Shown in pieces: positions 399 to 53,206 of a stretch of 64,000 bases of DNA. The notes beneath the pieces are model-generated. The model searched no databases. It saw only the letters and a list, made by a program, of their open reading frames with translations, and had not been told where the DNA came from. This DNA comes from Heterodontus francisci. Lineage: Eukaryota. The first letter of the stretch is position 1. Each line of letters begins with the position of its first letter. The stretch covers positions 372,001-436,000 of the forward strand of contig NW_027142325.1 of assembly GCF_036365525.1 (NCBI RefSeq), read 5' to 3'. Position numbers and translations under genes: made by a program.

Positions 399-1331
399 AT
401 GGCTGGGCAGGTGATGTGCTGTAGCTGTATGATGTGGGAGCTGGCTGTCCCCATTGTGAACGGCAGGGACCACATCTGCAGCAAGTGTTGGTTGCTGGAA
501 GAACTCCGGCTCAGAGTTGATGATCTGGAATCTGAGCTTCAAACACTACGGCACATCCGGGAGGGGGAGAGTTACCTGGACGTTTTGTTTCAGGAGGCAG
601 TCACACCTGGTAGATTAAGTAATTCAAATTCAGTTAGTGATCAGGGACAACAGGGTGTGATTGCAAGTGAGGCAGGTAGGGGGATCCTGAGTTCAGGAGT
701 GGAGGAGCCTCAGCCTTTGACCTTATCCAACAGGTACGAGATACTTGCTCCCTGTCTGGATGAGGAAAAGGGCTGCGGGGAGGATGAGCCAACTGACCAT
801 GGCACCATGGTGCAGAAGGCCATTCAAGAGGGGGGAGCAAAAAGACAAGTGGTAGTTTTTGGAGATTCTATAATTAGGGGGATAGATAGTATCCTTTGCA
901 AGCCGGATCGGGAGTCCCGCATGGTGTGTTGCCTGCCCGGTGCCAGGGTGCAGGACATCTCTGACCGGCTTGAAAGGATATTGGAGCGGGAGGGGGAGGA
1001 TCCAGTTGTTGTGGTCCACATTGGGACTAACAACATAGGCAAGGCTAGGATGGAGGACCTGTTTGGGGATTATAAAGCACTGGGAGCGAAATTAAGGAAC
1101 AGGTCCTCGAGGGTCATAATTTCCGGATTACTGCCCGAGCCACGTGCAAATTGGCTTAGGGATAAGAATACTAGGGAAGTAAACAGGTGGCTAAGGGAGT
1201 GGTGTGGGAAAGAGGGGTTCCATTTCATGGGGCATTGGCATCAGTTTTGGAACCGGGGGGGATCTGTACCGATGGGACGGTCTCCACTTGAACTGATCTG
1301 GAACCAGTGTTCTAGTGAAACGGATAAATAG
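399..1331 (+). CDS. CR1 ORF1p (Cys-rich N-terminus, coiled coil, SGNH/GDSL esterase); frameshifted near the 3' end at a G homopolymer (~1255-1262)
   Basis: CCSCMMW..CSKC; VVFGDSIIRG (block I); CCLPGA; VVHIGTNN (block III); the DGLHL block V lies in the adjacent frame. Confidence 0.88.
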   Translation: MAGQVMCCSCMMWELAVPIVNGRDHICSKCWLLEELRLRVDDLESELQTLRHIREGESYLDVLFQEAVTPGRLSNSNSVSDQGQQGVIASEAGRGILSSGVEEPQPLTLSNRYEILAPCLDEEKGCGEDEPTDHGTMVQKAIQEGGAKRQVVVFGDSIIRGIDSILCKPDRESRMVCCLPGARVQDISDRLERILEREGEDPVVVVHIGTNNIGKARMEDLFGDYKALGAKLRNRSSRVIISGLLPEPRANWLRDKNTREVNRWLREWCGKEGFHFMGHWHQFWNRGGSVPMGRSPLELIWNQCSSETDK

Positions 1332-1431
1332 GGTGGTCTCTAGGACTTTAAACTAGTGACTCAGGGGGCAGGGAAAGGGAAAACGACAGGGAGTATGATG
1401 GTAAATAAAAAGGTAAGCAGCAGGTTAACGT

Positions 1432-4259
1432 GTGCAGGAGGGTTTAAGTTCAAGGCAGACTATGAAAGAAGCAGAAAGGAAGGATAACTCAGGAGTTATT
1501 ATTAGAGATGTTGGAAATCATGAGGGTAAGAAAGCTAGCATAAAGGCACTTTACCTGAATGCTCGTAGCATTCGTAACAAGGTTGATGAGTTAACGGCAC
1601 AAATCATCACGAATAAATATGATTTGGTAGCCATTACGGAGACATGGTTACAGGTTGGTCACGACTGGGAGTTAAATATCCAGGCGTACCAGACTATTCG
1701 GAAGGACAGACAGGAAGGTAAGGGAGGTGGTGTAGCTCTGATATTCAAGGACGACATCAGGGCAGTGCTGAGAGATGATATAGGTTCTATGGAGAATGAG
1801 GTTGAATCAATTTGGGTGGAAATTAGAAACTCTAAGAAGAAAAAGTCATTGATAGGCGTAGTCTATAGGCCACCAAATAATATCACATTGGGGCGGGCAA
1901 TAAACAAAGAAATAACTAATGCCTGTAAAAATGGTACGGCAATTATCATGGGGGATTTTAATCTACATGTAGATTGGTCGAACCAGCTCAGTCAGGGTAG
2001 CCTTGAGGAGGAATTCGTTGAGTGTATCCGTGATAGTTTTCTTGAACAGTATGTAATGGAACCGACGAGGGAGCAAGCTATCCTAGATCTAGTCCTGTGT
2101 GATGAGACAGGAATAATTAATGACCTCATAGTTAGGGATCCTCTTGGAAGGAGTGATCACAGTATGGTTGAATTTAGAATACAAATGGAGAGTGTGAAGA
2201 TAAAATCCAATACCAGGGTCCTGCGCTTGAACAAGGGGGACTACAATAGAATGAGGGAGGACTTGGCTAAAGTAGACTGGAAACAAAGATTTTATGGTGG
2301 GACAGTTGACGAGCAGTGGAGGACTTTCAAAGCAATTTTTCAAAGTGCTCAGCTAAAGTATATTCCAGTGAAAAGGAAGGACTGGAAGAAAAGGGGTAAT
2401 ATGCCATGGGTGTCTAAGGAAATAAGGGAGGCTATCAAATTGAAAGAGAAGGCATACAAAGTGGCCAAAAGCAGCTTGAAACTAGAAGATTGGGAAAACT
2501 TTAAAGGTCAACAGAAAGCCACAAAAAGAGCTATAAAGAAAAGTAAGATAGAACATGAGAAAAAACTAGCACAGAATATAAAGACAGATAGCAAAAGTTT
2601 CTATAAATATATAAAACGAAAAAGAGTGGCTAAAGTAAACGTTGGTCCTTTAGAGGATGAGAAGGGGAATTTAGTTATGGGATATGATGAAATGGCCGAG
2701 GCATTAAACAGGTATTTTGTATCGGTCTTCACAGTGGAGGACATTAATAACATGCCAGTAATTGACAAAGAGACGAACGTAGGTGAGGACCTGGAAACAA
2801 TCATTATTACGGAAGAGGTAGTGTTGGGCCAGCTAATGGAGCTAAGGATTGATAAGTCTCCTGGCCCTAATGGAATGTCCCAGCTGATTGGAAAACAGCA
2901 GATGTGACGCCACTGTTTAAAAAGGGAGGTAGACAAAAGATGGGGAATTATAGACCGGTTAGCTTAACCTCTGCAGTGGGGAAGATGCTTGAGTCTATTA
3001 TCAAGGAAGAAATAGCAGGGCATCTCGATAGAAATTGTCCCGTTGGGCAGACGCAGCATGGGTTCATGAAGGGCAGGTCATGCTTGACAAATCTTTTGGA
3101 ATTCTATGATGACATTACGAGCAAGGTGGACAATGGGGACCCAGTGGATGTGGTGTACCTAGATTTCCAAAAGGCCTTAGACAAGGTGCCGCACAAGAGG
3201 CTGCTGCATAAGATAATGATGCATGGCGTCAGGGGTAAAGTATTAGCATGGATAGAGGATTGGTTGACTAACAGGAAGCAGAGAGTGGGGATAAATGAGT
3301 GCTATTCTGGTTGGCAATCAGTCACTAGTGGTGTGCCTCAGGGATCGGTGTTGGGACCGCAATTATTTACAATTTATATAGATGATTTGGAGTTGGGGAC
3401 CACGTGTAGGGTGTCAAAGTTTGCAGATGACACTAAGATGAGTGGCAGAGCAAAGTATGCAGATGACTGTGAAACTTTGCAGAGGAACATAGATACATTG
3501 AGTGAGTGGGCAAAGGTCTGGCAGACGGAATACAATGTTAATAAATGTGAAGTCATTCATTTCGGTAGGAGTAACAGTAAAAACGATTATTACTTGAATG
3601 GTAAAAAGTTGCAGCATGCTACTATGCAGAGGGACCTGGGTGTCCTTGTGCATGAATCGCAGAAGGTTGGTCTGCAGGTACAGCAAGTAATTAGGAAGGC
3701 AAATGGAATTTTGTCCTTCATTGCTAAAGGGATTGAGTTTAAAAGCAGAGAGGTTATGTTGCAGCTGTATAAGGTACTGGTGAGGCCGCACCTGGAGTAC
3801 TGTGTGCAGTTTTGGTCTCCTTACTTGAGAAAGGATATACTGGCACTGGAGAGGGTGCAGAGGAGGTTCACTAGGTTGATTCCAGAGTTGAGGGGGTTGG
3901 CTTATGAGGAGAGACTGAGTAGATTGGGATTATATTCATTGGAATTCAGAAGAATGAGGGGGGATCTTACAGAAACATATAAAATCATGAAGGGAATAGA
4001 TAAGATACAAGTAGAGAGGATGTTTCCACTGGCAGGTGAAGCTAGGACAAGAGGGCATAGCCTCAAGATTAGAGGGAGCAGATTTAGGACTGAATTAAGA
4101 AGGAACTTCTTCACCCAGAGGGTTGCTAATCTGTGGAATTCCTTGCCCAGTGAAGTAGTTGACGCTTCTCCAGTAAACGTTTTTAAAGCTAAGGTAAATA
4201 TCTTTTTGAACAATAAAGGAATTAAGGGATACGGTGGGAGCGCGGGTAAGTGGATCTGA
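1432..4259 (+). pseudogene. CR1 ORF2p (AP endonuclease + reverse transcriptase), split by a short internal deletion near 2880
   Basis: YLNARSI, AITETWL, MGDFN, SDH (APE); [30 protein letters not shown] (RT). The HPRVLKEVA...IFQ..DSG segment seen in other CR1 copies of this window is missing between SPGPNGM and (P)ADWK. Confidence 0.92.
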
Positions 4260-4379
4260 GTCCACGAAAAGATCAGCCATGATCTTATTGAATCGCAGAG
4301 CAGGCTTAAGTGGCCGGACGGCCTACTCCTGCTCCTAGTTCTGATGATCTTATGATCTTATTACTCTGTATCTTGCCCG

Positions 4380-7300
4380 TTTTTTTCATCTCTATTTTTA
4401 TAATATGGCCTTTATGCCCCAGGACCCTTTTATATATTTTATGTCGAGGTGGCCTTTATTTTTCTGGCCCCCTTTATATACATTTTATAAAAATAACTTT
4501 ATTAAAAAAAGATAAATAAAACAAAACTCAAATTAAAATGCCATTCTCGGCATCAATTATGCACTCCAGCCCCGACAGTGCTCACCGGTCGTGGAAGGCC
4601 TCAAGCGTACCGGCGGACGCCGCATGCTCCTTCTCCGGGGACAACTGGGCACGAACGTAACTGCGGAAGAGGGGCAGGCAATCAGGGAGGACGGACCCCC
4701 CGATGACCCGCAGCCTGGAAATGTGAATTGCCACCTTGGCCAGGCCCAGGAGCAGACCAATGAGGAGATCCTCCTCCCGGCCCACGCCCCTCCGCATCGG
4801 GTGCCCAAAGATCAGGAGCGTGGGGCTGAAGTGCAACCAAAACCTGAGGAGCAGCCCCTTCAAATACTCAAACAGGGGCTGCAACCTCGCACACTCCATA
4901 TACACGTGGAAAACGGACTCATCCGGACCGCAGAATTTACAGGCGGCCTGGGAGTCCGTGAACCTACTTAAAAGTCTATAGCACGGGACTGCCCTGTGCA
5001 ACACCCTCCACCCGAGGCCCCCAATGTAAAGGAGGATTCCCGCATAGAGAGACCTCCATCGGGGTTTCCCCTTGCTGCCAGATGGCAACACGGACTGCCA
5101 GGGCGTGTCTGACCAGCTGATGAGGGCGAGGAAGTGGAGAGTGAGCAGGAGCAGCCCGCACAGGAAACCCCTCCCCCCCAATTGGAATGACCCGGAGGGC
5201 ATTTCCGATGAGCAGTTCCGGCCAAGCCCCCTCGTCACCCGCAGTGAGGGGCGTCCTGGGGGCTTCAGCTACTTATTCGGCCGTCGGTCCATCCCTGGGG
5301 CCGGCCCACCAGACAGCCAGTTTTTAAGCAGGCGGAGATCGCCCCTCTTCGGCAGCAGGACGATGACCACCCTGCGCCACGAGACGGGCATCTCCCCGGT
5401 CGCCAGGCTTTCCCCCAGGACCCGCGCGTAATCGTCCCTCAGGACGTCCCAGAATGCCCTGAGGAACTCCACGGTCAGCCCGTCCAGCCCTGGGAATTTG
5501 CCCCTCGAGAGCTGGTGGAGGGCGCCAGTCAGCTCCGCCAACGTGAGCGGAGCCTCCAATCCTTTGGCGCCCTCCGGGCTGACCTGCGGCTGGTCCTCCC
5601 ACAAAACTCTGCGCGCGTCCTCGCTGGACGGATCCGGAGAGAACAACGCACTGTAATAAGTACGGACCAGGAGGTCCATTCCCTCTGGATCTGTGACGGA
5701 GGATCCGTTGTCAGCCAGCAGCTCAGCGAGCTGCTTACGGACATCCCGCCATTTTTCCAGCGAGTAGAAGAAGGGTGAGGCGTTGTCCAAATCTTCCAGG
5801 ATCTGGATCCTCGACCTCACGTATGCGCCTCGGGACCCTATGTGCTGCAGGTCCTCAGCGCGCCCTTCTCTTTGTACGCCTACCACAGGGCCAGGTCCGC
5901 GACGGCATGACCGAGGCGGGACTCCAAGTCGAGCACCTCCCTCTCTAGGTGCCTGATCTCGGCTTCCCGCCTCTTGGTCGACCCCTTCGCGTACTCCTGA
6001 CTGAAGACGCGGATGTGAGTCTTGCCCACATCCCACCATAGCCTCAAGGAGGGGAAGCCCCCCTGCTTCCTTCTCCAGTCAGCCCAGAATCGACGGAATG
6101 AGTCCCGGAATCGCTCATCTTCCAGCAGCCGGTTGTTAAAGTGCCAGTACGCGGACCCCGTGTGAGGAGCGGAATGAACTCTGCCCACACCAGGTGGTGG
6201 TCCAAGCACTGCACCAGCCGCATGGAGGCTGCCGAGACGCGGGAGACGAGCGCCTGCAAAAAGTAGAGGCAGCCGATTCGGGACCCTCCTCCTCCAGACC
6301 TCCAGGTGAAGGCGCTGGAGTTGGGATGGAGATTCCGCCAGACGTCCACCAAGTTAAGGGAGCTGATCAGTTCCCTCAACTTCTCCACCGACGCTTCGCC
6401 GCGCTGGGGACCGCAGCGATCCTCCACCTCGAGGGTGCAGTTAAAATCCCCCCCAAGGATGATGCACTTGCCGCTATCGATGGAGCTCAAGAGAGCGGAC
6501 ACTTCTTCAAAGAAGCGTGTGGGTTTCCTGCAGAAAATTCACCGCATATCTCCCTTCCCTGAGGACTGAGAGATTGTGAAATCTGCGGTGAGACCCCCTG
6601 CTGCCCTTGATGTTGAGGCTGGCTATGGTTATCTTCATGTCAAAGGTACTTAAAACCCGTCACCAACACCTCACTGTGAGGAGGGAACGGAAGTTCACCT
6701 GGCCCTCCACTCCCCCAGCAACCCATCGAGGAATGCATTAAAACGGCACCTCTCAACCAGTTTCGTGCCCTCACCCTTGCCCGCTTTCTTGAGGGCGGCA
6801 TGGACAGACTGGATGATCAGCTCCAGACTCGACCAACGGCCGAGGGCCAGCTGAACTTTATCGCGGCAACCCCTGCAAGCCGCGAGGAAATCCCGGAGTT
6901 CCGCCGTGGGGATGAGAGGAGACTCGGTGGGAGGCACGAGGGACTCTACCACCTCACTGGCAATGGAATCAAGGTTGTCCTCCATGCCCCAAACCGAGTC
7001 CCCATCCTCCTCCTGGTTGTCACTGCCAGCGGTCGACACACCCACCACACACTGTGGGCGGACGTCCCGGCCGCGCCAGCTGGTCCCGCCTCCGTCACGA
7101 TCCCACCCACAGGATCGATGGCGGAGGAGTCCCCTCTGGGTTCTAAGATGGAACTGGAGCCTGTGGGCACCAGCGGTTCAGGACCCTGCTCCACCTCCGT
7201 CCCCAGGCCAATGAGCAGTCCAGGGGAGACGGAAGTTCCCGACTCCGGAAATCCAGCCGGTGCTGAGACCGGAGGTGAAGAGAGGAGGCCATCTCCCGCT

Positions 7301-9331
7301 CCGCCAGCACCCACAGGCCCAGCAGATGGGGCAGCATTTTCAGTTATAACCAGGTCTGGTGTCTCCTGGTTGTCAGTGGATTCTGGCTGGGAGGGCCGAC
7401 CCTTTGGGGACTCGCCCTCCCCTCCACGCAGGCCACCGGACCCAGTGGCAGAACGGGAGGCTTCTCCAGAAGCGTCCCCAGACTCCCCCACCACAAGTAG
7501 GGCTTCAATTGCTCCCACAGGAGGGGCTGCATGTAGCGGGGCCTCCCCCTCCCCTCCATCCTGAAGAATAGGGAGCTCCTACCCAGACTTTGCAGTCTTG
7601 ATGTTGGTGGTGGTAGGGGGAACCTGGGGACCCGAAACAGGAGACAGCTCCCCTCCAACAGATGGGCCCTGCACCTCAGGGCCCTGTGTTACCTCTGTGG
7701 AGGGGTGCCTTCTCCTCTTTTTCCCACTGGGGCACAGAGGCTCAGAGACCTCCATGTCATCAGAGGCCTCCGCCTCCGCACCCTTTTTTTTTTAGTTACT
7801 CTGGGCCTGAGCCCAGCCTTGGGACAGGTGGATTCCCTGGGAGCGGGCCTTGGGCTGAGCCCAGACTCAGATTGTGTCACGGCGTCCAGGGAATGAGCCT
7901 CTCAGTGTTTACTTTTCCTCCACGCCTTCCTTCCACTCGGACGGGCACTCCCCTCCCCGCCGGAGGCTGTGAAAACCACAGCCTCCGGAACCGACTAAGC
8001 GGTGTCTGTTGGATGTGTGGGGTGAGTGGGAGGAGGTGCAGTGTCGCCACCCTGGGCCGCCGAAGTGGAACTGGCGGCCGGGAGGTTGGGGCAGTTCTTA
8101 TGAACATGCCCCACCCCCTTGCAGACGTGGCACCACACCCCGTCTAAGGTCCAAAAGACGTGGTAGACCGTCCCTGGAACTCCACACTGAAGTGGTCCTC
8201 CAAGACCTCCTCCCACGCCAGCTGCATAAATAGCTGGCGGCGGAAGGAGTAGACATGTCGGAGGCTGTGCTCCCGAAGACTAAGCCGGACTGGGGTGATC
8301 CCCGACCTCACCTCCCCCAGATGGTGCAGGTGGGGAAGGAGGAGCTCACTGGGAATAAAGGGCGGCACATTTGATAACATTATCCGCTGCGCAGTGGCCC
8401 CTAGAGGGTTCACCGGCAGGAAAGTCCAACCCACAGTGAGCCCTTTATTCAGGGCCAGGGGCACGGCCCGCTCGGTCTTCAGGAAGAACACAGCCTGCCC
8501 GTACATTTTTGAGGCTGCCACAATGGCTGAGGGGCCGACAACCTCGGCCATTGCCTTTACGCAGGCCTCTATAGACATTGGGGTGGGGATAGCTCTTTAC
8601 CCCATGGCTCGAAGTAATGAATTTAAAAGGTGACGGGGTCACACGGGCGGCCACAGAGGCTACAGCCGCATAGGTATGAGAAGGCCCCGCCACCAGTGAT
8701 GATGGGCTTGCCATGGTTCAAGAGCCAAACCCATCCCCAAATTGCAGGCAAACAAGCAAAAACAAAGAAACCAACTAGTAGGTTTGGGGAGAGGCTGAGG
8801 GAATACAGGAAAGGGGAAAGACAGGTTGCAAGCGATGACTTTGCTTTTTTTTTCTCCTTGAAGGGTGGTACTCAGAGCACTGTAAACACTCCTGGTCTTC
8901 CGGTTTTCTGGTTGTGGGAGGGGTCTTTTCCTGGGTCAGCCGAAAGCTGCCCAGGCACTAGTTAGATCCTTCTGTCTCTATAGCCAGGCAGCTTCAGCTG
9001 ACTCAGGCTGGGCAATTAGGGTGGGGAGGGAGCTTCCTTGTGTATTCAGTGCAATGGCACAGATCCCTGCAGAATTGTACAGCCCCCACCCCTTGTTGTT
9101 CCGGCCTCTTCCACCTCCCACAACAGTCCAAATGAATTAAAGCCTGGTGCTCGACACCCACCTCGAAATACAGCCTTATTGCCAAAGTCTTTCCTCCTCT
9201 GCAGCAAAAGTTGTTCAAAATTTTGCAGTTCAGTCCTCAGCTCTCCCTCTACAACAGCACCTCCAGCAACTGACTGCAGCACTATCAGCTGCACCTCGTT
9301 GATGCACTCAGCACCTCCAACTGGTTAGCAG
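4380..9331 (-). mobile_element. Tx1-clade LINE, internally deleted copy (Tx1 copy 1; RT domain lost)
   Basis: Collinear with 9807-16420: ORF1 from MASPSS (~8714) with CHVCKGVGHVHKNC knuckle, APE remnant, C-terminal CKFC...HVYMEC; poly(T) on + at 4380; RT region absent at the ~5315 junction. Confidence 0.92.
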
Positions 9332-9340
9332 CTAACCCCG

Positions 9341-9675
9341 TTTTTTTTTTTCTTTTTTTTTTAGCTGCAAGACGGAGGAGTCGCTGGAGGAGGTGGAGGG
9401 TGAGAGACGCTGCCCGGAGGGGTCGGGATGGGTCGGGCGGCCCGGGATCCGGGGTAGGGAGTCACAGGGGGCGGGGGGAAGGGGATTAATGCCCCCCAAC
9501 TCTTTCTGCCGCCCTCCTTTTCCCCCATTTTTTTTCCATGCGGATTCCCTATGTAAACAGGTCACGCTGCAGTTCCAGCTTACGGCCACTGGCGGCGCTG
9601 CAGTTTGAGGCCTGGATTTTTAAAAACCCACAGCCTGGGCTGAGGGGCGGCTTCAGTCTGGGAAATGCAGACCTG
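9341..9675 (-). mobile_element. Unclassified ~335-bp GC/CpG-rich poly(A)-tailed insertion at the Tx1 target site
   Basis: Starts directly after ctaaccccg with T11-C-T10; the target repeat resumes (gtgctgt) at 9676; no similarity seen to the Tx1 body and no tRNA A/B boxes recognised. Confidence 0.6.
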
Positions 9676-9806
9676 GTGCTGTCCCGGGCTGTATGATAGA
9701 GAATCCAGGGAGCTTTACTCTGTATCTAACCCCCGTGCTGTACCTGTCCTGGGGAGTGTTTGATGTGGACAGTGTGGAGGGAGCTTGACTCTGTATCTAA
9801 CCCCCG
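9676..9806 (+). repeat. ~71-bp tandem repeat units (gggagctttactctgtatctaacccccgtgctgtacctgtcctggggagtgtttgatgtggacagtgtgga); Tx1 target
   Basis: Unit starts at 9708 and 9779; further pieces at 4361-4379, 9332-9340 and 16421-16540. Confidence 0.88.
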
Positions 9807-9933
9807 TTTTTTTTTTTTTTCTTTTTTTTTTATATTTTATGTCGAGGGGGCCTTTATTCCTCAGGCCCCCTTTATATACACACTTATATTTTTAAAATAA
9901 CTTTATTAAAACCAGATAAATAAACAAAAAAAC

Positions 9934-12900
9934 TCAAATTAAAATGCCATTCTCGGCGTCGACGATGCACTCCAGTCCCTGCGGTGCCCACCGGTCGCGG
10001 AAGGCCTCAAGCGTACCGGCGGACACCGCATGCTCCTTTTCCAGGGACACCCAGGCGCGAACGTAACCGTGGAAGAGGGGCAGGCAAACGGGGAGGACGG
10101 ACCCCCCGACGGCCCGCAACCTGGACCTGTGAATTGCCACCTTGGCCAGGCCCAGGAGCAGACCGACGAGGAGATCCTCCTCCCGGCCCAAGCCCCTCCG
10201 CACCGGGTGCCCAAAGATCAGGAGCGTGGGACTGAAGTGCAGCCAGAATTTGAGGAGCAGCCCCTTCAGATACTCAAATAGGGGCTGCAACCTCGCACAC
10301 TCCATATAAATGTGGAACACGGACTCGTCCAGGCCGCAGAAAGTACAGCTGGCCTGGGAGTCCGTGAACCTACTTAAAAGCCTATTGCACGGGACTGCTC
10401 TGTGCAGCACCCTCCACCCCAGGTCCCCGATGTAAAGGGGGAAGACTCCCGCGTCGAGAGACCTCCATCGGGGTTTCCCCTCGCCGCCAGATGGCAACGC
10501 GGACCGCCAGGGCGTGTCCGGCCGGCTGACGAGGGCGAGGAAGTGGAGAGTGTGCAGGAGCAGCCCGTACAGGAAACCCCTCCGCGCCGATTGGAATGGC
10601 ACGGAGGGCATTTCCTAGAGGCGGCTCGGGTTGTGCGGGACCGGCTCCCGAGGAGGGTTTCGGGGCCTGGGTCCGATGAGCAGTTCCGGCCGAGCGGGGG
10701 TCAGCTCGGCCGGGATCGCTCCGCACTCCCGAGCCCCCTCGCCATCCGCAGTGAGGGGCGTCCCGGGGGTTTCGGCTACTCCTCCGCCCGCCGGACCGTC
10801 CCCGGAGTCGGCCGCCCGGACAGCCGAGGCGCTCTCCTCCGCCGGCGGGGGAGCGCCCTGACTGGAGGCGACCATGTTCCAGACTCGGAAAAGATCCCGG
10901 TAAAAGACAGGCAACTCCCTCAGAGAGGCGCGGCTAACGGACTCCACCGGGAGCTGCGTGTCGTCTTGAAGGCAGTGACACTGGCGGAAAAAATACGTCG
11001 CCAGCGCACACCATCTGGGAGGACGCTCGACGTACAGGTATCTCTGCAGGGTCCGAAGGCGGAGAGTCGCAGCCTGGGTGCGGACGCACACCAGCGACTG
11101 ACCGCCCTCCTCGATCGGGAGACTCAGGACCGCGGCAGAGACCCAGTGTTTCCTCTTGCCCCAGAAGAAATCGACGAGTTTCTACTGGATCTTGGTGGCA
11201 AATACAGGGGGCGGGGCCAAAGTGACCAACCGGTACCACAGCATGGAGGCCATCAGTTGGTTTATGACCAACGCTCGGCCCCTGTAGGAAAGCACTCGGA
11301 GCAGTCCTGTCCAGCGCCCCAGCCGAGCAGTGACTTTCGCCTCCAACTCCTGCCAGTTTGCCGGCCAGGCTTCCTCAGCGGGGCTAAGGTGGACTCCCAG
11401 ATAGAGGAGGTGCGTGGTGCTCCACGCAAAAGGTGTCATCTCCTCCGGCAGGGAGTCCACCCGCCACTGACCAACCAGGAGTCCGGAACATTTCTCCCAA
11501 TTGATCCTCGCGGAGGACGCGGCAGAAAAGGTCTGCTGGCAGTCGCGCATCCTCCGCAAGTCAACGGGATCTGTGATTGCGAGGAGCACGTCGTCGGCGT
11601 AAGCCGAGAGGACGACCCGCATGGCCGGCTCGCGCAGAGCCAATCCCGTCAACCTCCTGCGAAGCAGGCACAGGAAGGGCTCCACGCAGATGGTATACAA
11701 TTGGCCGGACATGGGGCACCCCTGACGCACTCCTCTCCCAAATCGAAGGGGCGCCGTCAAGGACCCGTTAACTTTGACTGGACACTCTGCGGCGGCGTAT
11801 AAAAGTCGGACCCGGGCCACGAAATGCGGCCCGAGTCCGAAAGCGCGCAGAGTCCCGAAAAGGTAATCGTGATCCACCCTGTCGAACGCCTTCTCCTGAT
11901 CGAGGGAGAGAAAGGCGACCGACTGACCAGTCCTCTGGGAAAGATGGATCAGGTCCCGGACCAGGTGGATGTTGTCCTGGATGGACCGGCCCGGGACCGT
12001 GTAGGACTGGTCGGGGTGGATCATGTGGGCCAGCTCGGAGCCCAGGCGGGTAGACATAGCCCGGGCAAAGATCTTATAATCCGTGCTGAGGAGGGAGACC
12101 GGACGCCAGTTTTTAAGCAGGCGGAGATCGCCCCTCTTTGGCAGCAGGACGATGACCGCCCTGCGCCACGAGAGGGGCATCTCCCCGGTCGCCAGGCTTT
12201 CCCCCAGGACCCGCGCGTAATCGTCCCCCAGGACGTCCCAGAACGCCCTGAGGAACTCCACGGTCAACCCATCCAGCCCTGGGGATTTGCCCCTCGAGAG
12301 CTGGTGGAGGGCGCCGGTCAGCTCCGCCAACGTGAGCGGAGCCTCCAATCCTTCGGCGGCTCCGGGCTGACCTGCGGCAGGTCCTCCCACAAAACTCTGC
12401 GCGCATCCTCGCTGGACGGATCCGGAGAGAACAACGCACTGTAATACGTCCGGACCAGGAGGCCCATTCCCTCCGGATCCGTGATGGAGGATCCGTCGTC
12501 GGCCAGCAGCTCGACGAGCTGCTTACGGACCCCCCGCCATTTTTCCAGCGAGTAGAAGAAGGGTGAGGCGCGGTCCAAATCTTCCAGGATCTGGATCCGC
12601 GACCTCACGTACGCGCCTCGGGACCCTATGAGCTGCAGGTTCCTCAGCGCGCCCTTCTTTTTGTACGCCTGCCACAGGGCCGGGTCCGCGACGGCATGAC
12701 CGAGGCGGGATTCCAAGTCGAGCACCTCCCTCTCAAGGCGCCCGATCTCGGCTTCCCGCCTCTTGGTCGACCCCCTCGCGTACTCCTGACAGAAGACGCG
12801 GATGTGAGTCTTGCCCACATCCCACCATAGCCTCAAGGAGGGGAAGCCCCCCTGCTTCCTTCTCCAGTCGGCCCAGAATCGACAGAACGAGTCCCGAAAT

Positions 12901-13667
12901 CGCACGTCCTCCAGCAGCCGGTTGTTAAAGTGCCAGTACGCGGACCCCGCCCGCGTGTGGAGTGGAGTGAACTCCGCCCACACCAGGCGGTGGTCCGAGC
13001 ACGGCACCAGCCGCATGGAGGCCGCCGAAACGCGGGAGACGTACGCCTGCGAAATGTAGAGGTGGTCGATTCGCGACCCCCCTCCTCCAGACCTCCACGT
13101 GAAGGCGCTGGAGTCAGGATGGAGATTCCGCCAGACGTCCACCAAGTTAAGGGAGCTGATCAGTCCCCTCAACTTCTCCACCGACGCTTGGCCGCGCTGG
13201 GGACCGGAGCGATCCCCCACCTCGAGGGTGCAGTTAAAATCCCCCCCGAGGATGATGCACTCGCCGCTATCGATGGAGCTCAAGAGAGCGGACACTTCTT
13301 CAAAGAAGCGCGCTTGCAACGCGCTGGGCCTGGGCGCGTACACGTTCACAAAGTGGAGCGGCACGCTACCCAGGTGAACGGCGAGGTGGAGCAAGTGGCC
13401 CGGCACTAGCTCCTTGACCCCCAAGATCTCCGGCTGAAAAGTCGGGGCCAACAAGATAGCCACCCCACTAGAAATAGGGGTGAGGTGACTCATGTAGACC
13501 CCACCCTGCCACTCCAGGAGCCAGGTGGCTTCGTCTCCCGGAACGGTGTGGGTTTCCTGCAGAAAGCTCACCGCGTATCTCCCTTCCCTAAGGACTGAGA
13601 GATTGTGAAATCTGCGGTGAGCCCCTCTGCTGCCGTTGATGTTGAGGCTGGCTATGGTTATCTTCAT
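9934..13667 (-). pseudogene. Tx1 ORF2p (APE endonuclease, RT, C-terminal zinc-binding region)
   Basis: MKITIASLNING, LQETH, GGDFN, SRID, SDH; KSPGLDG, NWRPVSLL, LDQEKAFDRV, GVRQGCPMSG, AYADD; CTFC..ESVFHIYMEC; frameshifts near 12370 and 10613, stop at ~11182. Confidence 0.93.
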
Positions 13668-13699
13668 GTCAAAGGTACTTAAAACCCGTCACCAACACC

Positions 13700-15744
13700 T
13701 CACTGTGAGGAGGGAGTGGAAGTGCACCTGGCCCTCCACTCCCCCAGCAACCCATTGAGGAACACATTAAAACGGCGCCTCTCAACCAGTTTCACGTCCG
13801 CGCGCTTGCCCGCTATCTTAAGGGCGGCACGGACGGACTGGATGATCAGCGCCAGATTCGACCAACGGTCGAGGGCCAGCTGAACTTTATTGCGGCAACC
13901 TCTGCAAGCCGCGAGGAAATCCCGGAGTTCCGCCGTGGGGATGAGAGGAGATTCGGTGGGAGGCACGAGGGACTCCACCACCTCACTGGCGATGGAATCA
14001 AGATCATCCTCCGTGCCCCGCACCGAATCCCCATCCTCCTCCGGGTCGTCACCGCCAGCGGCCGACACATCCACCACACACTGTGGGGCAGACGTCCCGG
14101 CCGCGCCAGCTGGTCCCGCCTCCGTCACGATCCCACCCCCAGGATCAATGGCGGAGGAGTCCTCTCTGGGTTCTATTGTGAAACTGGAGCCTGTAGGCAC
14201 CAGCGGTTCAGGACCCCCCTCCACCTCCATCACCCAGGCCAATGAGTGGTCCAGGGGAGACAGAAGTTCCGGACTCCGGGAAACCAGCCGGAGCCAAGAC
14301 TGGAGGCGGCGAGAGGAGGCCATCTCCCGCTCCGCCAGCACCCACAGGCCCAGCAGATGGGGCAGCATTCTCAGTTATAACTGGGTCGGGTGTCTCCTGG
14401 TTGGTGGTGGACTCCGGCTGGGAGGCCCGACCCTCTGGGGCCTCGCCCTCCCCTTCATTCAGGGCACCCGACCCAGTAGCAGTGGCGGAATGGGCGGTTT
14501 CCCCAGGCTCCCCCACCACAAGCAGGGCCCCACTTACTCCTTCAGGAGGGGCCTCAGGTACCGGGGCCATCCCCTCCCCTCCATCCTGAGGAATAGGGAG
14601 CACCTGCCCGGACTTTGCAGCCTTGGTGGTGGCGGTAGGGGGAACCTGAGGACCAGAAACAGGAGGCAGCTCCCCTCCAACAGATGGGCCCTGCACCTCA
14701 GGGCCCTGTGTTATTTCTGTGGAGGGGTGCCTTCTCCTCTTTTTCGCATTTGGGCGCGGAGACTCAGAGACCTCCATGTCATCAGAGGCCTCCGCCTCCG
14801 CACCCTTTTTTCCCTTTTTAGTCACCCTGGGCCTGAGCCCAGCCCTGGGACAGGTGGATTCCATGGGAATGGGCTTTGGGCTGAGCTCAGGCTCGGGTTG
14901 AGTCAAAGTGGCCAGGGGACGCGCCTCACGATGTTTCTTTTTTTCCCCGCGTCTTCCTTCCGCTCGGTCGGACGCTCCCCTCCCCGCCAGAGGCTGTGAA
15001 AACCACAGCCTCCGGAACCGACTGAGCGGTGTCTGTTGGATGTGTGGGGGGAGTGGGAGGAGGTGCTGTGGAACCACTCTGGGCCGCCGAGGTGGAGCTG
15101 GCGGCCGGGAGGTTGGGGCAGTTCTTACGAACATGCCCCACCCCCTTGCAGACGTGGCACCGCGCCCCGTCCGAGGTCCAAAAGACGCGGTAGGCTGTCC
15201 CCTGGAACTCCACATTAAATTGGCCCTCCGTGTCCTCCTCCCATGCCAGCTGCATAAATAACTGGCGGCGGAAGGAGTAGACATGTTGGAGGCTGTGCTC
15301 CCGAAGACCAAGCCGGACTGGGGTGATCCCCGACCTCACCTCCCCCAGATGGTGCAGGTGGGGGAGGAGGAGCTCACTGGGAATGAAGGGTGGGACGTTG
15401 GACAACATTATCCGATGCGCAGTGGCCCCCAGAGGGTCCACTGGCAGGAAGGTCCCCCCCACAGTGAGCCCTTTACTCAGGGCCAGGGACACCGCCCGCT
15501 CGGTCTTCAAAAAGAACACAGCCTTCCCATACATCTTTGAGGCCGCAACAATGGCCGAGGGGCCGACAACCACGGCCATTGCCTTAACGCAGGCCTCAAT
15601 AGACATGTTGGGGTGGGGATAGCTCTTCACCCCATGGCTGCATGTCAATAATTTAAAGGGTGACGGGGCCACGTGGGCAGCCACAGAAGCTGCAGCTGCG
15701 TAGATAGTAGAGGGCCCCGCCACCGGTGATGAAGGGCTTGCCAT
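13700..15744 (-). pseudogene. Tx1 ORF1p (N-terminal RRM-like region, CCHC zinc knuckle, long Pro/Ser/Glu-rich tail); two frameshifts
   Basis: ASKMYGKAVFFL, IMLSNVPPFI, SFRRQLFM, CHVCKGVGHVRKNC; pieces in ORFs 14926-15765, 14208-15311, 13700-14368. Confidence 0.88.
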
Positions 15745-16420
15745 GGGTCTAAGAGCTAAACCCACCCCAAATTGTGGACTTGCACACTAAATAACAGCGA
15801 CTCACAGAAAAATTTGAAAAGACAAACAAACAAACAACAGGTTAGTGGAGAGGCTGAGGTAAGAGAGGAGAGGCAAAGGCAGGCTGGAAGGGATGACTTG
15901 CTTTCTGGAGGTGGTGCTCACAGTACACTTAAAACAAACAGTCTTTGAAGTTGGTCTTCCGGTCCTCTGGTTGGGGGAGTCGTCTTCACCTGGGTCAGCT
16001 GAAGCTGCCCAGGCACTATCTATCCCCTTCCGTCTGTTTAGCTGGGCAGCTTCAGCTGACCCAGGCTTGGCAATTGGGGTGGGGAGGGAGCTTTCCTGTG
16101 TGCTTTTGCAGCAGCACAGATTCCTGCTGAATTGGCAGCCCCACCCCTTGTTGTTCCAGCCACTTGTTCCTCCCCCAACAGTCCAAAGTAAATTACTGGT
16201 GTTCAGCACCCACCTCCAGACAAAGCCTTGTTTCCAAAAAATGTCCCTTTCTTCTCTTTAATGGAGACTGTTGTTGGAGTTTTCCTCTGCTTGTTGGTAG
16301 CTGCTCTCCCTTGCTCAGTGCAGCTCCTCTCTCCACCTCTGCAACCTCCAACTGCCACCAGCACTCTCAGCTGCACCTCGTTGAGGCTCTCAACACTCAG
16401 GTTCCCAAATCAGAGAGCAG

Positions 16421-16540
16421 CCAATCCCAGTGCTGTCCCTGTCCTGGAAGTGTTTGATGGGACAGTGTAGTGGGGGCTCTACTCTGTATCTAATGCGTGC
16501 TGTACCTGTGATGGGAGTGCTTAATGGGATAGAGTAGAGG
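16421..16540 (+). repeat. Degenerate continuation of the ~71-bp tandem repeat
   Basis: ccaatcccagtgctgtccctgtcctggaagtgtttgatgggacagtgtag...actctgtatctaatgcgtgctgtacctg. Confidence 0.82.
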
Positions 16541-16544
16541 AGAT

Positions 16545-16880
16545 TTATTCTATTTTTTGATGAGGTAAGAGAGACAGTTGATGAGGTTTGTGCGATTGAT
16601 GCGGTGCACGTGGATTTCCAAAAGGCATTTGCTAAAGTGCCGCATAACAAGCTTGTCAGCAATGTCAGAACCTACGGAATAAAAGGGACAGGAGCAGCAT
16701 GGATACAAAATTGGCGGAGTGAGAGGAAACAGAGAGTAGTGATGAACGGTTGTTTTTTCAGACTGGAGGAAGACATTCTCAAGGGGTCAGTGTTGGAACC
16801 CCATCTTTTCCTGATATATATTAATGACATCGATGTGGGGGCACAATTTCAATATTTGTGGATGACACAAAACTTGCAAT
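16545..16880 (+). mobile_element. CR1 RT fragment
   Basis: VDFQKAFAKVPH...[17 protein letters not shown]. Confidence 0.8.
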
Positions 16881-48331: not shown

Positions 48332-51300
48332 TATAAACCATCTGAACCCGTCTGTTATATTCCAGCCTGTAACTCACTGTTATTTATCCATTATTTAATG
48401 TATAAACTACCCAAACCCCTCTGTTATATTCCAGCTTGTAACTCACTGTTATTTATCCATTATTCTATGTATAAACTACCCAAACCCCTCTGTTATATTC
48501 CAGCCTGTAACTCACTGTTATTTATCCATTATTCTATGTATAAACTACCCAAACCCCTCTGTTATATTCCAGCCTGTAACTCACTGTTATTTATCCATTA
48601 TTTAATGTATAAACTACCCAAACCCCTCTGTTATATTCCAGCTTGTAACTCACTGTTATTTATCCATTATTCTATGTATAAACTACCCAAACCCCTCTGT
48701 TATATTCCAGCCTGTAACTCACTGTTATTTATCCATTATTCTATGTATAAACTACCCAAACCCCTCTGTTATATTCCAGCTTGTAACTCACTGTTATTTA
48801 TCCATTATTCTATGTATAAACTACCCAAACCCCTCTGTTATATTCCAGCCTGTAACTCACTGTTATTTATCCATTATTCTATGTATAAACTACCCAAACC
48901 CCTCTGTTATATTCCAGCTTGTAACTCACTGTTATTTATCCATTATTCTATGTATAAACTACCCAAACCCCTCTGTTATATTCCAGCCTGTAACTCACTG
49001 TTATTTATCCATTATTCTATGTATAAACTACCCAAACCCCTCTGTTATATTCCAGCCTGTAACTCACTGTTATTTATCCATTATTTAATGTATAAACTAC
49101 CCAAACCCCTCTGTTATATTCCAGCCTGTAACTCACTGTTATTTATCCATTATTTAATGTATAAACTACCCAAACCCCTCTGTTATATTCCAGCCTGTAA
49201 CTCACTGTTATTTATCCATTATTCTATGTATAAACTACCCAAATCCCTCTGTTATATTCCAGCCTGTAACTCACTGTTATTTATCCATTATTTAATGTAT
49301 AAACTACCCAAACCCCTCTGTTATATTCCAGCCTGTAACTCACTGTTATTTATCCATTATTCTATGTATAAACTACCCAAATCCCTCTGTTATATTCCAG
49401 CCTGTAACTCACTGTTATTTATCCATTATTTAATGTATAAACTACCCAAACCCCTCTGTTATATTCCAGCCTGTAACTCACCGTTATTTATCCATTATTC
49501 TATAAATTACCCAAATCCCTCTGTTATATTCCGGCCTGTAACTCACTGTTATTTATCCATTATTCTATGTATAAACTACCCAAATCCCTCTGTTATATTC
49601 CAGCCTGTAACTCACTGTTATTTATCCATTATTCTATGTATAAACTACCCAAACCCCTCTGTTATATTCCAGCCTGTAACTCACCGTTATTTATCCATTA
49701 TTCTATAAATTACCCAAATCCCTCTGTTATATTCCGGCCTGTAACTCACTGTTATTTATCCATTATTCTATGTATAAACTACCCAAATCCCTCTGTTATA
49801 TTCCAGCCTGTAACTCACTGTTATTTATCCATTATTCTATGTATAAACTACCCAAACCCCTCTGTTATATTCCAGCCTGTAACTCACTGTTATTTATCCA
49901 TTATTCTATGTATAAACTACCCAAATCCCTCTGTTATATTCCAGCCTGTAACTCACTGTTATTTATCCATTATTCTATGTATAAACTACCCAAACCCCTC
50001 TGTCATATTCCAGCCTGTAACTCACTGTTATTTATCCATTATTTAATGTATAAACTACCCAAACCCCTCTGTTATATTCCAGCCTGTAACTCACTGTTAT
50101 TTATCCATTATTCTATGTATAAACTACCCAAATCCCTCTGTTATATTCCAGCCTGTAACTCACTGTTATTTATCCATTATTTAATGTATAAACTACCCAA
50201 ACCCCTCTGTTATATTCCAGCCTGTAACTCACTGTTATTTATCCATTATTCTATGTATAAACTACCCAAATCCCTCTGTTATATTCCAGCCTGTAACTCA
50301 CTGTTATTTATCCATTATTTAATGTATAAACTACCCAAACCCCTCTGTTATATTCCAGCCTGTAACTCACTGTTATTTATCCATTATTCTATGTATAAAC
50401 TACCCAAATCCCTCTGTTATATTCCAGCCTGTAACTCACTGTTATTTATCCATTATTCTATAAATTACCCAAATCCCTCTGTTATATTCCAGCCTGTAAC
50501 TCACTGTTATTTATCCATTATTCTATGTATAAACTACCCAAACCCCTCTGTTATATTCCAGCCTGTAACTCACTGTTATTTATCCATTATTCTATGTATA
50601 AACTACCCAAATCCCTCTGTTATATTCCAGCCTGTAACTCACTGTTATTTATCCATTATTTAATGTATAAACTACCCAAACCCCTCTGTTATATTCCAGC
50701 CTGTAACTCACTGTTATTTATCCATTATTTAATGTATAAACTACCCAAATCCCTCTGTTATATTCCAGCCTGTAACTCACTGTTATTTATCCATTATTCT
50801 ATGTATAAACTACCCAAACCCCTCTGTTATATTCCAGCCTGTAACTCACTGTTATTTATCCATTATTCTATGTATAAACTACCCAAATCCCTCTGTTATA
50901 TTCCAGCTTGTAACTCACTGTTATTTATCCATTATTCTATGTATAAACTACCCAAACCCCTCTGTTATATTCCAGCCTGTAACTCACTGTTATTTATCCA
51001 TTATTCTATGTATAAACTACCCAAACCCCTCTGTTATATTCCAGCCTGTAACTCACTGTTATTTATCCATTATTTAATGTATAAACTACCCAAACCCCTC
51101 TGTTATATTCCAGCCTGTAACTCACTGTTATTTATCCATTATTTAATGTATAAACTACCCAAATCCCTCTGTTATATTCCAGCTTGTAACTCACTGTTAT
51201 TTATCCATTATTCTATGTATAAACTACCCAAACCCCTCTGTTATATTCCAGCCTGTAACTCACTGTTATTTATCCATTATTCTATGTATAAACTACCCAA

Positions 51301-53206
51301 ATCCCTCTGTTATATTCCGGCCTGTAACTCACCGTTATTTATCCATTATTCTATAAATTACCCAAATCCCTCTGTTATATTCCGGCCTGTAACTCACTGG
51401 TATTTATCCATTATTCTATGTATAAACTACCCAAACCCCTCTGTTATATTCCAGCCTGTAACTCACTGTTATTTATCCATTATTCTATGTATAAACTACC
51501 CAAACCCCTCTGTTATATTCCAGCCTGTAACTCACTGTTATTTATCCATTATTTAATGTATAAACTACCCAAACCCCTCTGTTATATTCCAGCCTGTAAC
51601 TCACCGTTATTTATCCATTATTCTATAAATTACCCAAATCCCTCTGTTATATTCCGGCCTGTAACTCACCGTTATTTATCCATTATTCTATAAATTACCC
51701 AAATCCCTCTGTTATATTCCAGCCTGTAACTCACTGTTATTTATCCATTATTCTATGTATAAACTACCCAAATCCCTCTGTTATATTCCAGCCTGTAACT
51801 CACCGTTATTTATCCATTATTCTATAAATTACCCAAATCCCTCTGTTATATTCCGGCCTGTAACTCACTGTTATTTATCCATTATTCTATGTATAAACTA
51901 CCCAAACCCCTCTGTTATATTCCAGCCTGTAACTCACTGTTATTTATCCATTATTCTATGTATAAACTACCCAAACCCCTCTGTTATATTCCAGCCTGTA
52001 ACTCACCATTATTTATCCATTATTCTATGTATAAACTACCCAAACCCCTCTGTTATATTCCAGCCTGTAACTCACTGTTATTTATCCATTATTCTATGTA
52101 TAAACTACCCAAATCCCTCTGTTATATTCCAGCCTGTAACTCACCGTTATTTATCCATTATTCTATGTATAAACTACCCAAATCCCTCTGTTATATTCCA
52201 GCCTGTAACTCACTGTTATTTATCCATTATTCTATGTATAAACTACCCAAACCCCTCTGTTATATTCCAGCCTGTAACTCACTGTTATTTATCCATTATT
52301 CTATGTATAAACTACCCAAACCCCTCTGTTATATTCCAGCCTGTAACTCACTGTTATTTATCCATTATTCTATGTATAAACTACCCAAACCCCTCTGTTA
52401 TATTCCAGCCTGTAACTCACTGTTATTTATCCATTATTCTATAAATTACCCAAACCCCTCTGTTATATTCCAGCCTGTAACTCACCGTTATTTATCCATT
52501 ATTCTATAAATTACCCAAATCCCTCTGTTATATTCCGGCCTGTAACTCACTGTTATTTATCCATTATTCTATAAATTACCCAAATCCCTCTGTTATATTC
52601 CAGCCTGTAACTCACCGTTATTTATCCATTATTCTATAAATTACCCAAATCCCTCTGTTATATTCCGGCCTGTAACTCACTGTTATTTATCCATTATTCT
52701 ATAAATTACCCAAATCCCTCTGTTATATTCCAGCCTGTAACTCACCGTTATTTATCCATTATTCTATAAATTACCCAAATCCCTCTGTTATATTCCGGCC
52801 TGTAACTCACTGTTATTTATCCATTATTCTATAAATTACCCAAATCCCTCTGTTATATTCCAGCCTGTAACTCACCGTTATTTATCCATTATTCTATAAA
52901 TTACCCAAATCCCTCTGTTATATTCCAGCCTGTAACTCACCGTTATTTATCCATTATTCTATAAATTACCCAAATCCCTCTGTTATATTCCGGCCTGTAA
53001 CTCACCGTTATTTATCCATTATTCTATAAATTACCCAAATCCCTCTGTTATATTCCAGCCTGTAACTCACCGTTATTTATCCATTATTCTATAAATTACC
53101 CAAACCCCTCTGTTATATTCCAGCCTGTAACTCACTGTTATTTATCCATTATTCTATGTATAAACTACCCAAACCCCTCTGTTATATTCTAGCCTGTAAC
53201 TCACTC
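48332..53206 (+). repeat. Minisatellite, 69-bp unit with a 65-bp variant, roughly 70 copies
   Basis: tataaactacccaaacccctctgttatattccagcctgtaactcactgttatttatccattattctatg repeated; the 23-aa periodic ORFs reflect the 69-bp unit. Confidence 0.98.

What the first reader, a model, noticed from the sequence alone, without database searches (positions are those of the whole stretch)
4361..16540. Candidate satellite-specific Tx1 retrotransposon: three insertions at the same nucleotide of a ~71-bp repeat unit
Seen: poly(T) tails start right after ttactctgtatcttgcccg (4379), ctaaccccg (9340) and actctgtatctaacccccg (9806), all in the same orientation. An empty unit at ~9716-9741 reads ...tctaacccccg^tgctgt. 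Both Tx1 5' ends finish in agcag followed by a ~9-10-bp target copy (ctaaccccg; ccaatcccag), and the repeat resumes with gtgctgt at 9676 and 16430. Established: Tx1-clade APE elements are often sequence-specific (Tx1L, Keno in U2 snRNA, Mutsu in 5S rDNA, Dewa in tRNA arrays, Kibi/Koshi in microsatellites). Inference: this family's endonuclease recognises a shark minisatellite, uses it as a safe harbour and re-targets its own TSD to build head-to-tail stacks. I do not recall this target being described, but could not search.
Basis: partly seen in the sequence, partly recalled or inferred. Interest (0 to 1): 0.85.

Follow-up and report, generated by a model that had tools for sequence, protein, structure and literature searches.

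The report
Site-specific Tx1 retrotransposon in 70-bp repeat
A jumping gene closely related to the frog Tx1L element has inserted repeatedly at one exact nucleotide of a ~70-bp repeat in this genome; this is the known habit of the Tx1 group, here with a target that I could not find described.

Summary
Three poly(T) starts (4380, 9341, 9807) each follow the last G of a ~70-bp repeat unit (...tctgtatctaaccccG^TGCTGT), all in one orientation. An empty boundary lies at 9735/9736. Two inserts are copies of one APE+RT retrotransposon on the minus strand. Copy C is full length. Copy A is internally deleted and belongs to another subfamily. The third insert, B (335 bp), is a different sequence at roughly single-copy contig depth.

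The reverse transcriptase is 64% identical, without gaps, to Xenopus Tx1L ORF2, so Tx1 membership is shown.

Contigs of public runs give further junctions at other loci. At least 9 join the unit end to the Tx1 3' region and at least 2 join a Tx1 5' end to the unit. A run under another organism label has the unit end followed by poly(T).

An unrelated 71-unit satellite in the same window has no insertion.

Best reading: a sequence-specific Tx1 family whose endonuclease nicks CCCCG^TGCTGT. B would be an RNA mobilised in trans.

Tx1 families that target satellites and transposons, and stacks that sandwich a target copy, are already published (Kojima 2015). So this is a new member of a known kind. 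Six other first-stage notes report the same on other DNA of this genome; I did not check them. The share of copies in this target was not measured, and Repbase/Dfam could not be searched.

The parts
4362..4379 (+). Last 18 bp of a repeat unit (tactctgtatcttgcccg). It is the left flank and primer side of the copy A insertion, and it abuts the 3' end of a CR1-like LINE.
   Evidence: 18-mer match with 3 mismatches
4380..9331 (-). Tx1 copy A. It has a short A7 tail (4380-4386 on +), a partly duplicated 3' UTR, three internal deletions relative to copy C, and a 5' end ...agcag at 9327-9331.
   Evidence: 85-93% identity to C in three blocks, gaps between the blocks; 5' 300 nt about 62% identical to C
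9332..9340 (+). 9-bp target copy ctaaccccg, sandwiched between the 5' end of A and the poly(T) of B.
9341..9675 (-). Insert B: a 335-bp poly(A)-tailed sequence unrelated to Tx1, with contig depth close to that of other single-locus contigs. It has no target copy at its 5' junction. Probably an RNA retrocopy made in trans.
   Evidence: depth 24-49 against 1e5 for Tx1; a 342-bp contig spans 9395-9736 with 1 difference; no Rfam family
9676..9735 (+). Repeat unit u1 (diverged, 60 bp). Its end at 9735/9736 is an empty target site.
9736..9806 (+). Repeat unit u2 (71 bp). Its last G (9806) is the primer end for copy C.
9807..16420 (-). Tx1 copy C, full length (6.6 kb) with frameshifts. Tail is 9807-9831. 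The ORF2 C-terminal zinc-binding piece is 9934-10611, RT is 11182-12390 and APE is 12318-13667. ORF1 pieces are 13700-15765, with a CCHC knuckle. The 5' UTR runs to agcag at 16416-16420.
16421..16430 (+). Target-like copy ccaatcccag at the 5' junction of C. It matches 7 of 10 positions of the left flank ctaacccccg.
16431..16555 (+). Repeat unit u3 (16431-16499) and partial unit u4 (16500-16555). The boundary at 16499/16500 is empty. A 5'-truncated CR1-like LINE follows.

Best explanation
This is a family of Tx1-clade non-LTR retrotransposons, close kin of Xenopus Tx1L. It inserts by target-primed reverse transcription at one fixed nucleotide of a ~70-bp repeat.

Inferred mechanism: the element's APE endonuclease nicks the window's + strand between CCCCG and TGCTGT. 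The freed 3'-OH primes reverse transcription on the poly(A) tail, which is why poly(T) follows that G directly. The second strand is cut about 8-10 nt upstream, at tat^ctaac, so a short copy of the target lies at the element's 5' end.

That copy together with the downstream TGCTGT rebuilds a usable site, so later insertions stack with only the short copy between them (A + ctaaccccg + B). Insert B is a cellular or other RNA that the same machinery copied in trans.

Shown: the anatomy, the clade, and that the same junction recurs at other loci. Inferred: which protein part reads the DNA, the position of the second cut, and the order of events.
For: Three different inserts share the junction nucleotide and the orientation. 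CCCGTTTTTTT occurs 3 times against 0.05 expected.

A and C are not local duplicates. ORF2 is 93% identical, but the 5' 300 nt are only about 62% identical, the 3' UTR structure differs, and the flanks differ. B is a different sequence altogether.

Domains are APE, RVT_1 and zf-RVT, and ORF1 carries a CCHC knuckle. The RT is 64% and the APE 48% identical to YTX2_XENLA, against 143 bits to L1 ORF2p.

In the contigs of run X1, at least 9 contigs join the unit end (9729-9734) to the Tx1 3' region (9922-9935, 10076). Contigs also join a Tx1 5' end (9308, 9310) to the unit (9728, 9732). Each has the depth of a single locus (13-59). Summed depth is about 1-2.8e5 at the 3' end against 2-11e3 at the 5' end, which means mostly 5'-truncated copies, as retrotransposition leaves them. 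In run X7, under another organism label, the unit end is followed by TTTTTTTTT.

Internal control: an unrelated 69-bp satellite of 71 units at 48345-53205 has no insertion.

The DNA-reading beta-hairpin of the APE is FTWRSGGGGSR in both copies. Tx1L has FTYVRVRDGHVSQSR, and its RDGH tip is the part discussed as a DNA contact in PMC1950540.

Tx1L endonuclease is a proven sequence-specific nickase (PMC1950540). Tx1 families that target satellites and transposons, and tandem insertions sandwiching a TSD, are published (PMC4494074).
Against: The share of genomic copies that sit in this target was not measured.

The two 'TSD' copies do not match. A differs by 2 substitutions and 1 indel in 9 bp; C differs at 3 of 10 positions. 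So a true duplication is not shown. The right-hand copies could belong to the next unit (a one-unit deletion) or could have come with the element.

B has no target copy at its 5' junction.

The poly(A) tail of A is only 7 nt.

No enzyme data exist.
Confidence: 0.8

Rival explanations
1. The repeat is not an independent target but travels with the element. Transcripts start in upstream units, and these units are carried as a 5' extension. The element thus seeds its own landing pads, and the units next to the 5' ends are inherited rather than local.
For: The copy at C's 5' junction (ccaatcccag) does not match C's own left flank (ctaacccccg). A contig from another locus with the same 5'-UTR type carries the same cc variant (...gcaaccaacccccgtgctgt, table 5c). 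The array to the right of C is only 1.8 units long and ends in unrelated DNA. Summed depth of the unit is only about 5 times that of the Tx1 3' ends. Kojima 2015 discusses co-transcription with the target for Tx1/SINEU.
Against: Units also lie 3' of the poly(A) tails, where the element cannot have brought them. Most copies are 5'-truncated, yet contigs still join unit ends to 3' regions. The 'cc' can equally be extra G residues added at the 5' end of full-length cDNAs. Even under this model the 3' junction still needs a site-specific nick.
Confidence: 0.1
2. A composite block (unit + Tx1) was amplified by segmental or tandem duplication. The shared junctions would then descend from one or a few insertions.
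For: A and C lie 5 kb apart in one short array. Copies are 85-93% identical.
Against: Divergence is mosaic: 93% in ORF2 but about 62% in the 5' 300 nt. The 3' UTRs and flanks differ. B is a different insert at the same nucleotide. Junction contigs break at different 3'-UTR positions. The strong 3' over 5' depth excess points to many 5'-truncated retrotransposition events.
Confidence: 0.05
3. The preference is for a DNA structure or chromatin state of the array, or the 3' junctions were fixed by microhomology. The endonuclease would not be reading the sequence.
For: No biochemical data exist for this enzyme.
Against: Single-nucleotide precision and a fixed orientation hold for three inserts and for further contigs. 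The primer end CCCCG has no T to pair with poly(A). An equally repetitive 69-bp satellite 32 kb away is untouched. The closest characterised relative, Tx1L-EN, is sequence-specific in vitro.
Confidence: 0.05

Closest known systems
Tx1L of Xenopus laevis (ORF2 = YTX2_XENLA). It inserts at one site in the DNA transposon Tx1D, and its endonuclease is sequence-specific in vitro.
   Same: RT 64% and APE 48% identical. Same domain order. A long ORF1 of about 690 codons with a CCHC knuckle. Insertion at a fixed nucleotide of another repeated sequence.
   Different: The target here is a ~70-bp tandem unit with TGCT downstream of the nick; Tx1L has AGTT downstream (PMC1950540). The target copy is about 8-10 bp, whereas Tx1L's duplication is longer (23 bp, from memory, not checked). 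The APE beta-hairpin is 4 residues shorter and Gly-rich, RSGGGG in place of VRVRDGHVSQ.
Tx1-Mar families and SINEU-3 of crocodilians (Kojima 2015, PMC4494074), and the satellite-targeting Tx1 families in that paper's Fig. 3.
   Same: Tx1-clade elements with a preferred site in an abundant repeat. Tandem insertions sandwich a TSD. Non-autonomous RNAs are mobilised to the same site.
   Different: A different target (Mariner-N4_AMi and others). The crocodilian group clusters with Keno, while this family is nearest to Tx1L and to turtle elements. The passenger here (B) is not a repeated SINE: its contig depth is close to that of single-locus contigs.
Keno (U2 snRNA genes) and Kibi/Koshi (TC and TTC microsatellites), other target-specific Tx1 lineages.
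   Same: Same clade and the same safe-harbour habit in multicopy sequence.
   Different: Their targets are RNA genes or microsatellites, not a 70-bp unit. No sequence comparison was done here.
Human L1
   Same: APE + RT + C-terminal zinc-binding domain, a poly(A) tail, target-primed reverse transcription, and trans-mobilisation of other RNAs.
   Different: Only 143 bits to this RT. The L1 nick site is a loose TTTT/AA; here it is a fixed G/C-rich site.

Membership tests
Tx1 clade of non-LTR retrotransposons | The RT domain groups with Tx1L rather than with L1 or other clades | tested here: met
   249/390 identical (64%), no gaps, 511 bits to YTX2_XENLA. The best other full-length representatives are at most 49% identical. 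L1 ORF2p gives 143 bits and R2 gives 91 bits. No formal tree with named outgroups was built.
Tx1 clade of non-LTR retrotransposons | N-terminal APE endonuclease, RT and C-terminal zinc-binding domain in ORF2 | tested here: met
   PF03372 (6e-18), PF00078 (9e-39) and PF13966 (1.6e-4, below the curated cut-off), in that order on the minus strand. The reading frame is broken into pieces in both copies.
Tx1 clade of non-LTR retrotransposons | ORF1 with a CCHC zinc knuckle (type I ORF1; the type is stated from memory) | tested here: inconclusive
   CHVCKGVGHVRKNC is present in the 14926-15765 piece. No Pfam hit for the ORF1 pieces. Not compared with Tx1L ORF1.
Target-specific Tx1 family (Kojima 2015 criterion) | One type of sequence flanks more than 20% of the copies | tested here: inconclusive
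   In the window both Tx1 copies (and insert B) lie in the unit. At least 11 further junction contigs were seen.
Target-specific Tx1 family | Insertion at the same nucleotide and in the same orientation of the target | tested here: met
   Junctions lie after G 4379, 9340 and 9806, all with the element on the minus strand. Contig joints cluster at 9729-9734, and poly(T) follows the unit end in run X7.
Target-specific Tx1 family | The endonuclease nicks the target sequence specifically in vitro | not testable with these tools
   This needs purified APE domain and unit oligonucleotides.

The most novel reading that the evidence does not exclude
The ~70-bp repeat and this Tx1 family spread together. 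Full-length transcripts start in the upstream units and carry them, with the target copy, to new loci. The element thus plants its own landing pads and builds the short dispersed arrays it later re-uses. This would explain three things: the mismatch between the two 'TSD' copies, the same 'cc' variant at the 5' junctions of two different loci, and a unit abundance only a few-fold above that of Tx1 3' ends.
Probability: 0.12. Interest if true: 0.65.

Novelty: new member of a known kind. Interest (0 to 1): 0.38.

Why it matters
Site-specific LINEs are studied as natural models for programmable, safe-harbour insertion. This family and Xenopus Tx1L share 64% of their RT residues but nick different sequences. 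They also differ sharply in the beta-hairpin of the endonuclease that is thought to read the DNA. That makes them a natural pair for asking which residues set the target. The family is abundant: summed contig depth suggests thousands of 3' ends, a rough figure. It therefore also accounts for a visible share of this genome's repeat structure, and it should be annotated as one system (element + target repeat) and not as unrelated repeats. In itself the behaviour is what specialists expect of the Tx1 clade.

Tried and rejected
1. The look-up of encoding contigs was called on a relative with 80% identity (P0120) to fetch independent copies with flanks.

2. Read laying masked the poly(T) tracts (9333-9368, 9796-9843). 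Canonical junction-spanning contigs could therefore not be counted; only joints with variant 3' UTRs were visible.

3. Naming relatives failed twice. The atlas search gave only generic 'reverse transcriptase' clusters, and the listing of cluster members on ten full-length representatives gave no names. The name came from a search with the full-length relative P0125, which returned YTX2_XENLA.

4. Rfam on the unit, on B and on the 5' UTRs gave nothing near any gathering score. So the unit is not a recognisable RNA gene, unlike the targets of Keno, Mutsu or Dewa.

5. No open-access paper prints the unit's 15-mer. The Tx1 target papers of Carroll's laboratory (PMC85248, PMC362770) are not held.

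6. The search of earlier findings by sequence came back blank, which means nothing according to the operators.

7. Is the large 69-bp satellite at 48345-53205 the same repeat? No: the alignment score is 7 against 8.2 +/- 1.5 for shuffles.

8. The idea that the units are 5'-UTR monomers of the element was rejected. They also lie 3' of the poly(A) tails and are far more abundant than Tx1 5' ends.
Full report
**What is there**

Read on the + strand, the region is laid out as follows:
- A CR1-like LINE (+, about 400-4360).
- The last 18 bp of a repeat unit (4362-4379).
- Retrotransposon copy A on the minus strand (4380-9331).
- A 9-bp target copy, ctaaccccg (9332-9340).
- A 335-bp poly(A)-tailed insert, B, on the minus strand (9341-9675).
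- Two repeat units (9676-9735 and 9736-9806).
- Retrotransposon copy C on the minus strand (9807-16420).
- A 10-bp target-like copy, ccaatcccag (16421-16430).
- 1.8 more units (16431-16555), then a truncated CR1-like LINE.

With the inserts removed, what remains is a short array of about four units of 69-71 bp (alignment). Each poly(T) starts right after the final G of a unit, at 4380, 9341 and 9807. Boundaries 9735/9736 and 16499/16500 are empty.

CCCGTTTTTTT occurs three times in 64 kb, only at these junctions, against 0.05 expected. The unit's 18-mer occurs nowhere else in the window.

**What the inserts are**

A and C are the only two copies of this element in the window. C is full length at 6.6 kb. 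On the minus strand its pieces carry APE (PF03372, 6e-18), RT (PF00078, 9e-39) and a weak zf-RVT match. An upstream ORF1 of about 690 codons is in three pieces and carries a CCHC knuckle. Both copies have frameshifts and stops.

A lacks three internal blocks and has a partly duplicated 3' UTR and only an A7 tail. Identity between A and C is mosaic. It is 93% over 1.2 kb of ORF2 and 85-88% elsewhere. The 5' terminal 300 nt are only about 62% identical, although both start CTGCT. That pattern fits two subfamilies, not a local duplication.

B is unrelated to Tx1 and matches no Rfam family. Its contig depth (24-49) is close to that of other single-locus contigs in the same run. So it is not a repeated SINE. 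A 342-bp contig confirms its junction with the unit (table 8).

**Clade**

The closest proteins in the large collection are turtle sequences at 60-68% identity. A search with the full-length relative P0125 returned the Swiss-Prot entry for Xenopus Tx1 ORF2 (P0281).

Direct comparison of the RT piece gives 249/390 identical residues with no gaps, and the APE piece gives 211/439. Human L1 ORF2p scores 143 bits and R2 proteins 91 bits. The element therefore belongs to the Tx1 clade, in the lineage of Tx1L itself. I did not build a tree with named outgroups.

**Is the target choice real beyond this window?**

Contigs of four public runs were laid on 9100-10400 at 80% likeness. In X1, the run that best holds the window, 8,849 contigs matched.

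Summed depth was as follows:
- about 1-2.8e5 over the Tx1 3' region;
- 2-11e3 over the 5' UTR;
- 1-8.5e5 over the unit;
- 24-49 over B.

The tool warns that these sums are not copy numbers. Taken roughly, they mean thousands of mostly 5'-truncated copies and a unit only a few-fold more abundant.

Among the 15 joints shown (of 103), nine contigs at single-locus depth join the unit end (9729-9734) to the Tx1 3' region (9922-9935 or 10076). These are other loci with a variant 3' UTR. Two or three contigs join a Tx1 5' end (9308/9310) to the unit at 9728/9732. One of them reads ...tcaatcagagggcaacc + aacccccgtgctgt.

In X7, filed under another organism label, a contig has the unit end followed by TTTTTTTTT. 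Both the unit and the Tx1 3' region are also present in X5, X6 and X7.

Six other first-stage notes on other pieces of this genome describe the same association. I could not check them and do not count them as evidence.

An internal control exists. A 4.9-kb satellite of 71 units of 69 bp at 48345-53205 is unrelated to the target unit and carries no insertion.

**Mechanism (inferred)**

With the element on the minus strand, the + strand is the strand that primes. A nick between CCCCG and TGCTGT leaves a 3'-OH on G, from which the poly(A) tail is copied. This is exactly what the three junctions show.

The 5' ends of A and C both lie 9-10 nt upstream of the unit boundary. That places a second, equally fixed cut at tat^ctaac.

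However, the two copies of the supposed duplication do not match. For A they are cttgcccg against ctaaccccg, and for C ctaacccccg against ccaatcccag. Three readings remain open:
- a true 8-10-bp duplication that later mutated (C's g-to-a change is at a CpG);
- a second-strand cut at the same motif one unit downstream, which would delete about 61 bp and leave the next unit's end beside the 5' end;
- for C, extra G residues at the 5' end, or flank carried along from the source locus. The same 'cc' variant is seen at another locus with the same 5'-UTR type.

B has no target copy at its 5' junction. The stack A + 9 bp + B matches the 'tandem insertions sandwiching a TSD' described for SINEU-3 and Tx1-Mar (PMC4494074). 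The order of A and B cannot be decided.

**The endonuclease**

I aligned the APE domains of this family, Tx1L, turtle relatives and more distant Tx1-like proteins. The hairpin that Repanas et al. grafted, and whose tip in Tx1L is RDGH (PMC1950540), reads as follows:
- Xenopus: FTYVRVRDGHVSQSR.
- Turtles: FTFVRVEAHRSHHSR.
- This family: FTWRSGGGGSR, in both copy A and copy C.

So the relatives differ most where target reading is expected. This is suggestive but is not proof.

**Comparison with what is known**

Target specificity is a hallmark of the Tx1 clade. Tx1L inserts into Tx1D, Keno into U2 genes, Kibi and Koshi into microsatellites, and Tx1-Mar into a Mariner. Satellite-targeting families are listed in Fig. 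3 of Kojima 2015. Tx1L endonuclease is sequence-specific in vitro.

The present case adds a family and a target, not a new principle. I found no open-access paper on this target or on site-specific Tx1 in cartilaginous fishes. Repbase and Dfam could not be searched, so the family may already be catalogued.

**Limits**

- The N runs in the window were left alone.

**Verdict**

This is a new member of a known kind, of moderate interest, mainly as a natural retargeting partner of Tx1L.

Noticed in passing
window 9341-9675 (minus strand): Insert B: a G+C-rich 335-bp sequence with a 23-nt A-rich tail but no AATAAA signal near its end. It sits at the same nucleotide as the Tx1 copies. It matches no Rfam family and has no other copy in the window. 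Its source RNA is unknown.
   Followed up: partly
window 15989-16012 / 16042-16065: A perfect 24-nt inverted repeat (29-nt loop) in the 5' UTR of Tx1 copy C. By eye, copy A has an imperfect counterpart at about 8931-9009. It may be a structural or promoter element of the family.
   Followed up: partly
window 48345-53205: A 69-bp satellite of 71.5 units at 95% matches. It is unrelated to the Tx1 target unit and free of insertions.
   Followed up: partly
window ~400-4360 (+) and 16556 onward (+): CR1-like LINE copies border the small unit array on both sides. The left one ends in gatcttatgatcttat directly against the unit fragment, so the array was also hit by a non-specific LINE.
   Followed up: no
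window 11182-12390 (minus strand) against turtle and Xenopus proteins: The RT is 60-68% identical to many sea-turtle copies and 64% identical to Xenopus Tx1L. That is high for hosts that diverged so long ago. Either this lineage evolves slowly or horizontal transfer should be considered.
   Followed up: no
runs X5 and X6: Runs under two other organism labels hold the 3' region of copy C at about 99% identity, but only 24 and 8 contigs were laid, against 8,849 in X1. It is unclear whether this reflects run depth, a filter, or a real difference in family size.
   Followed up: no
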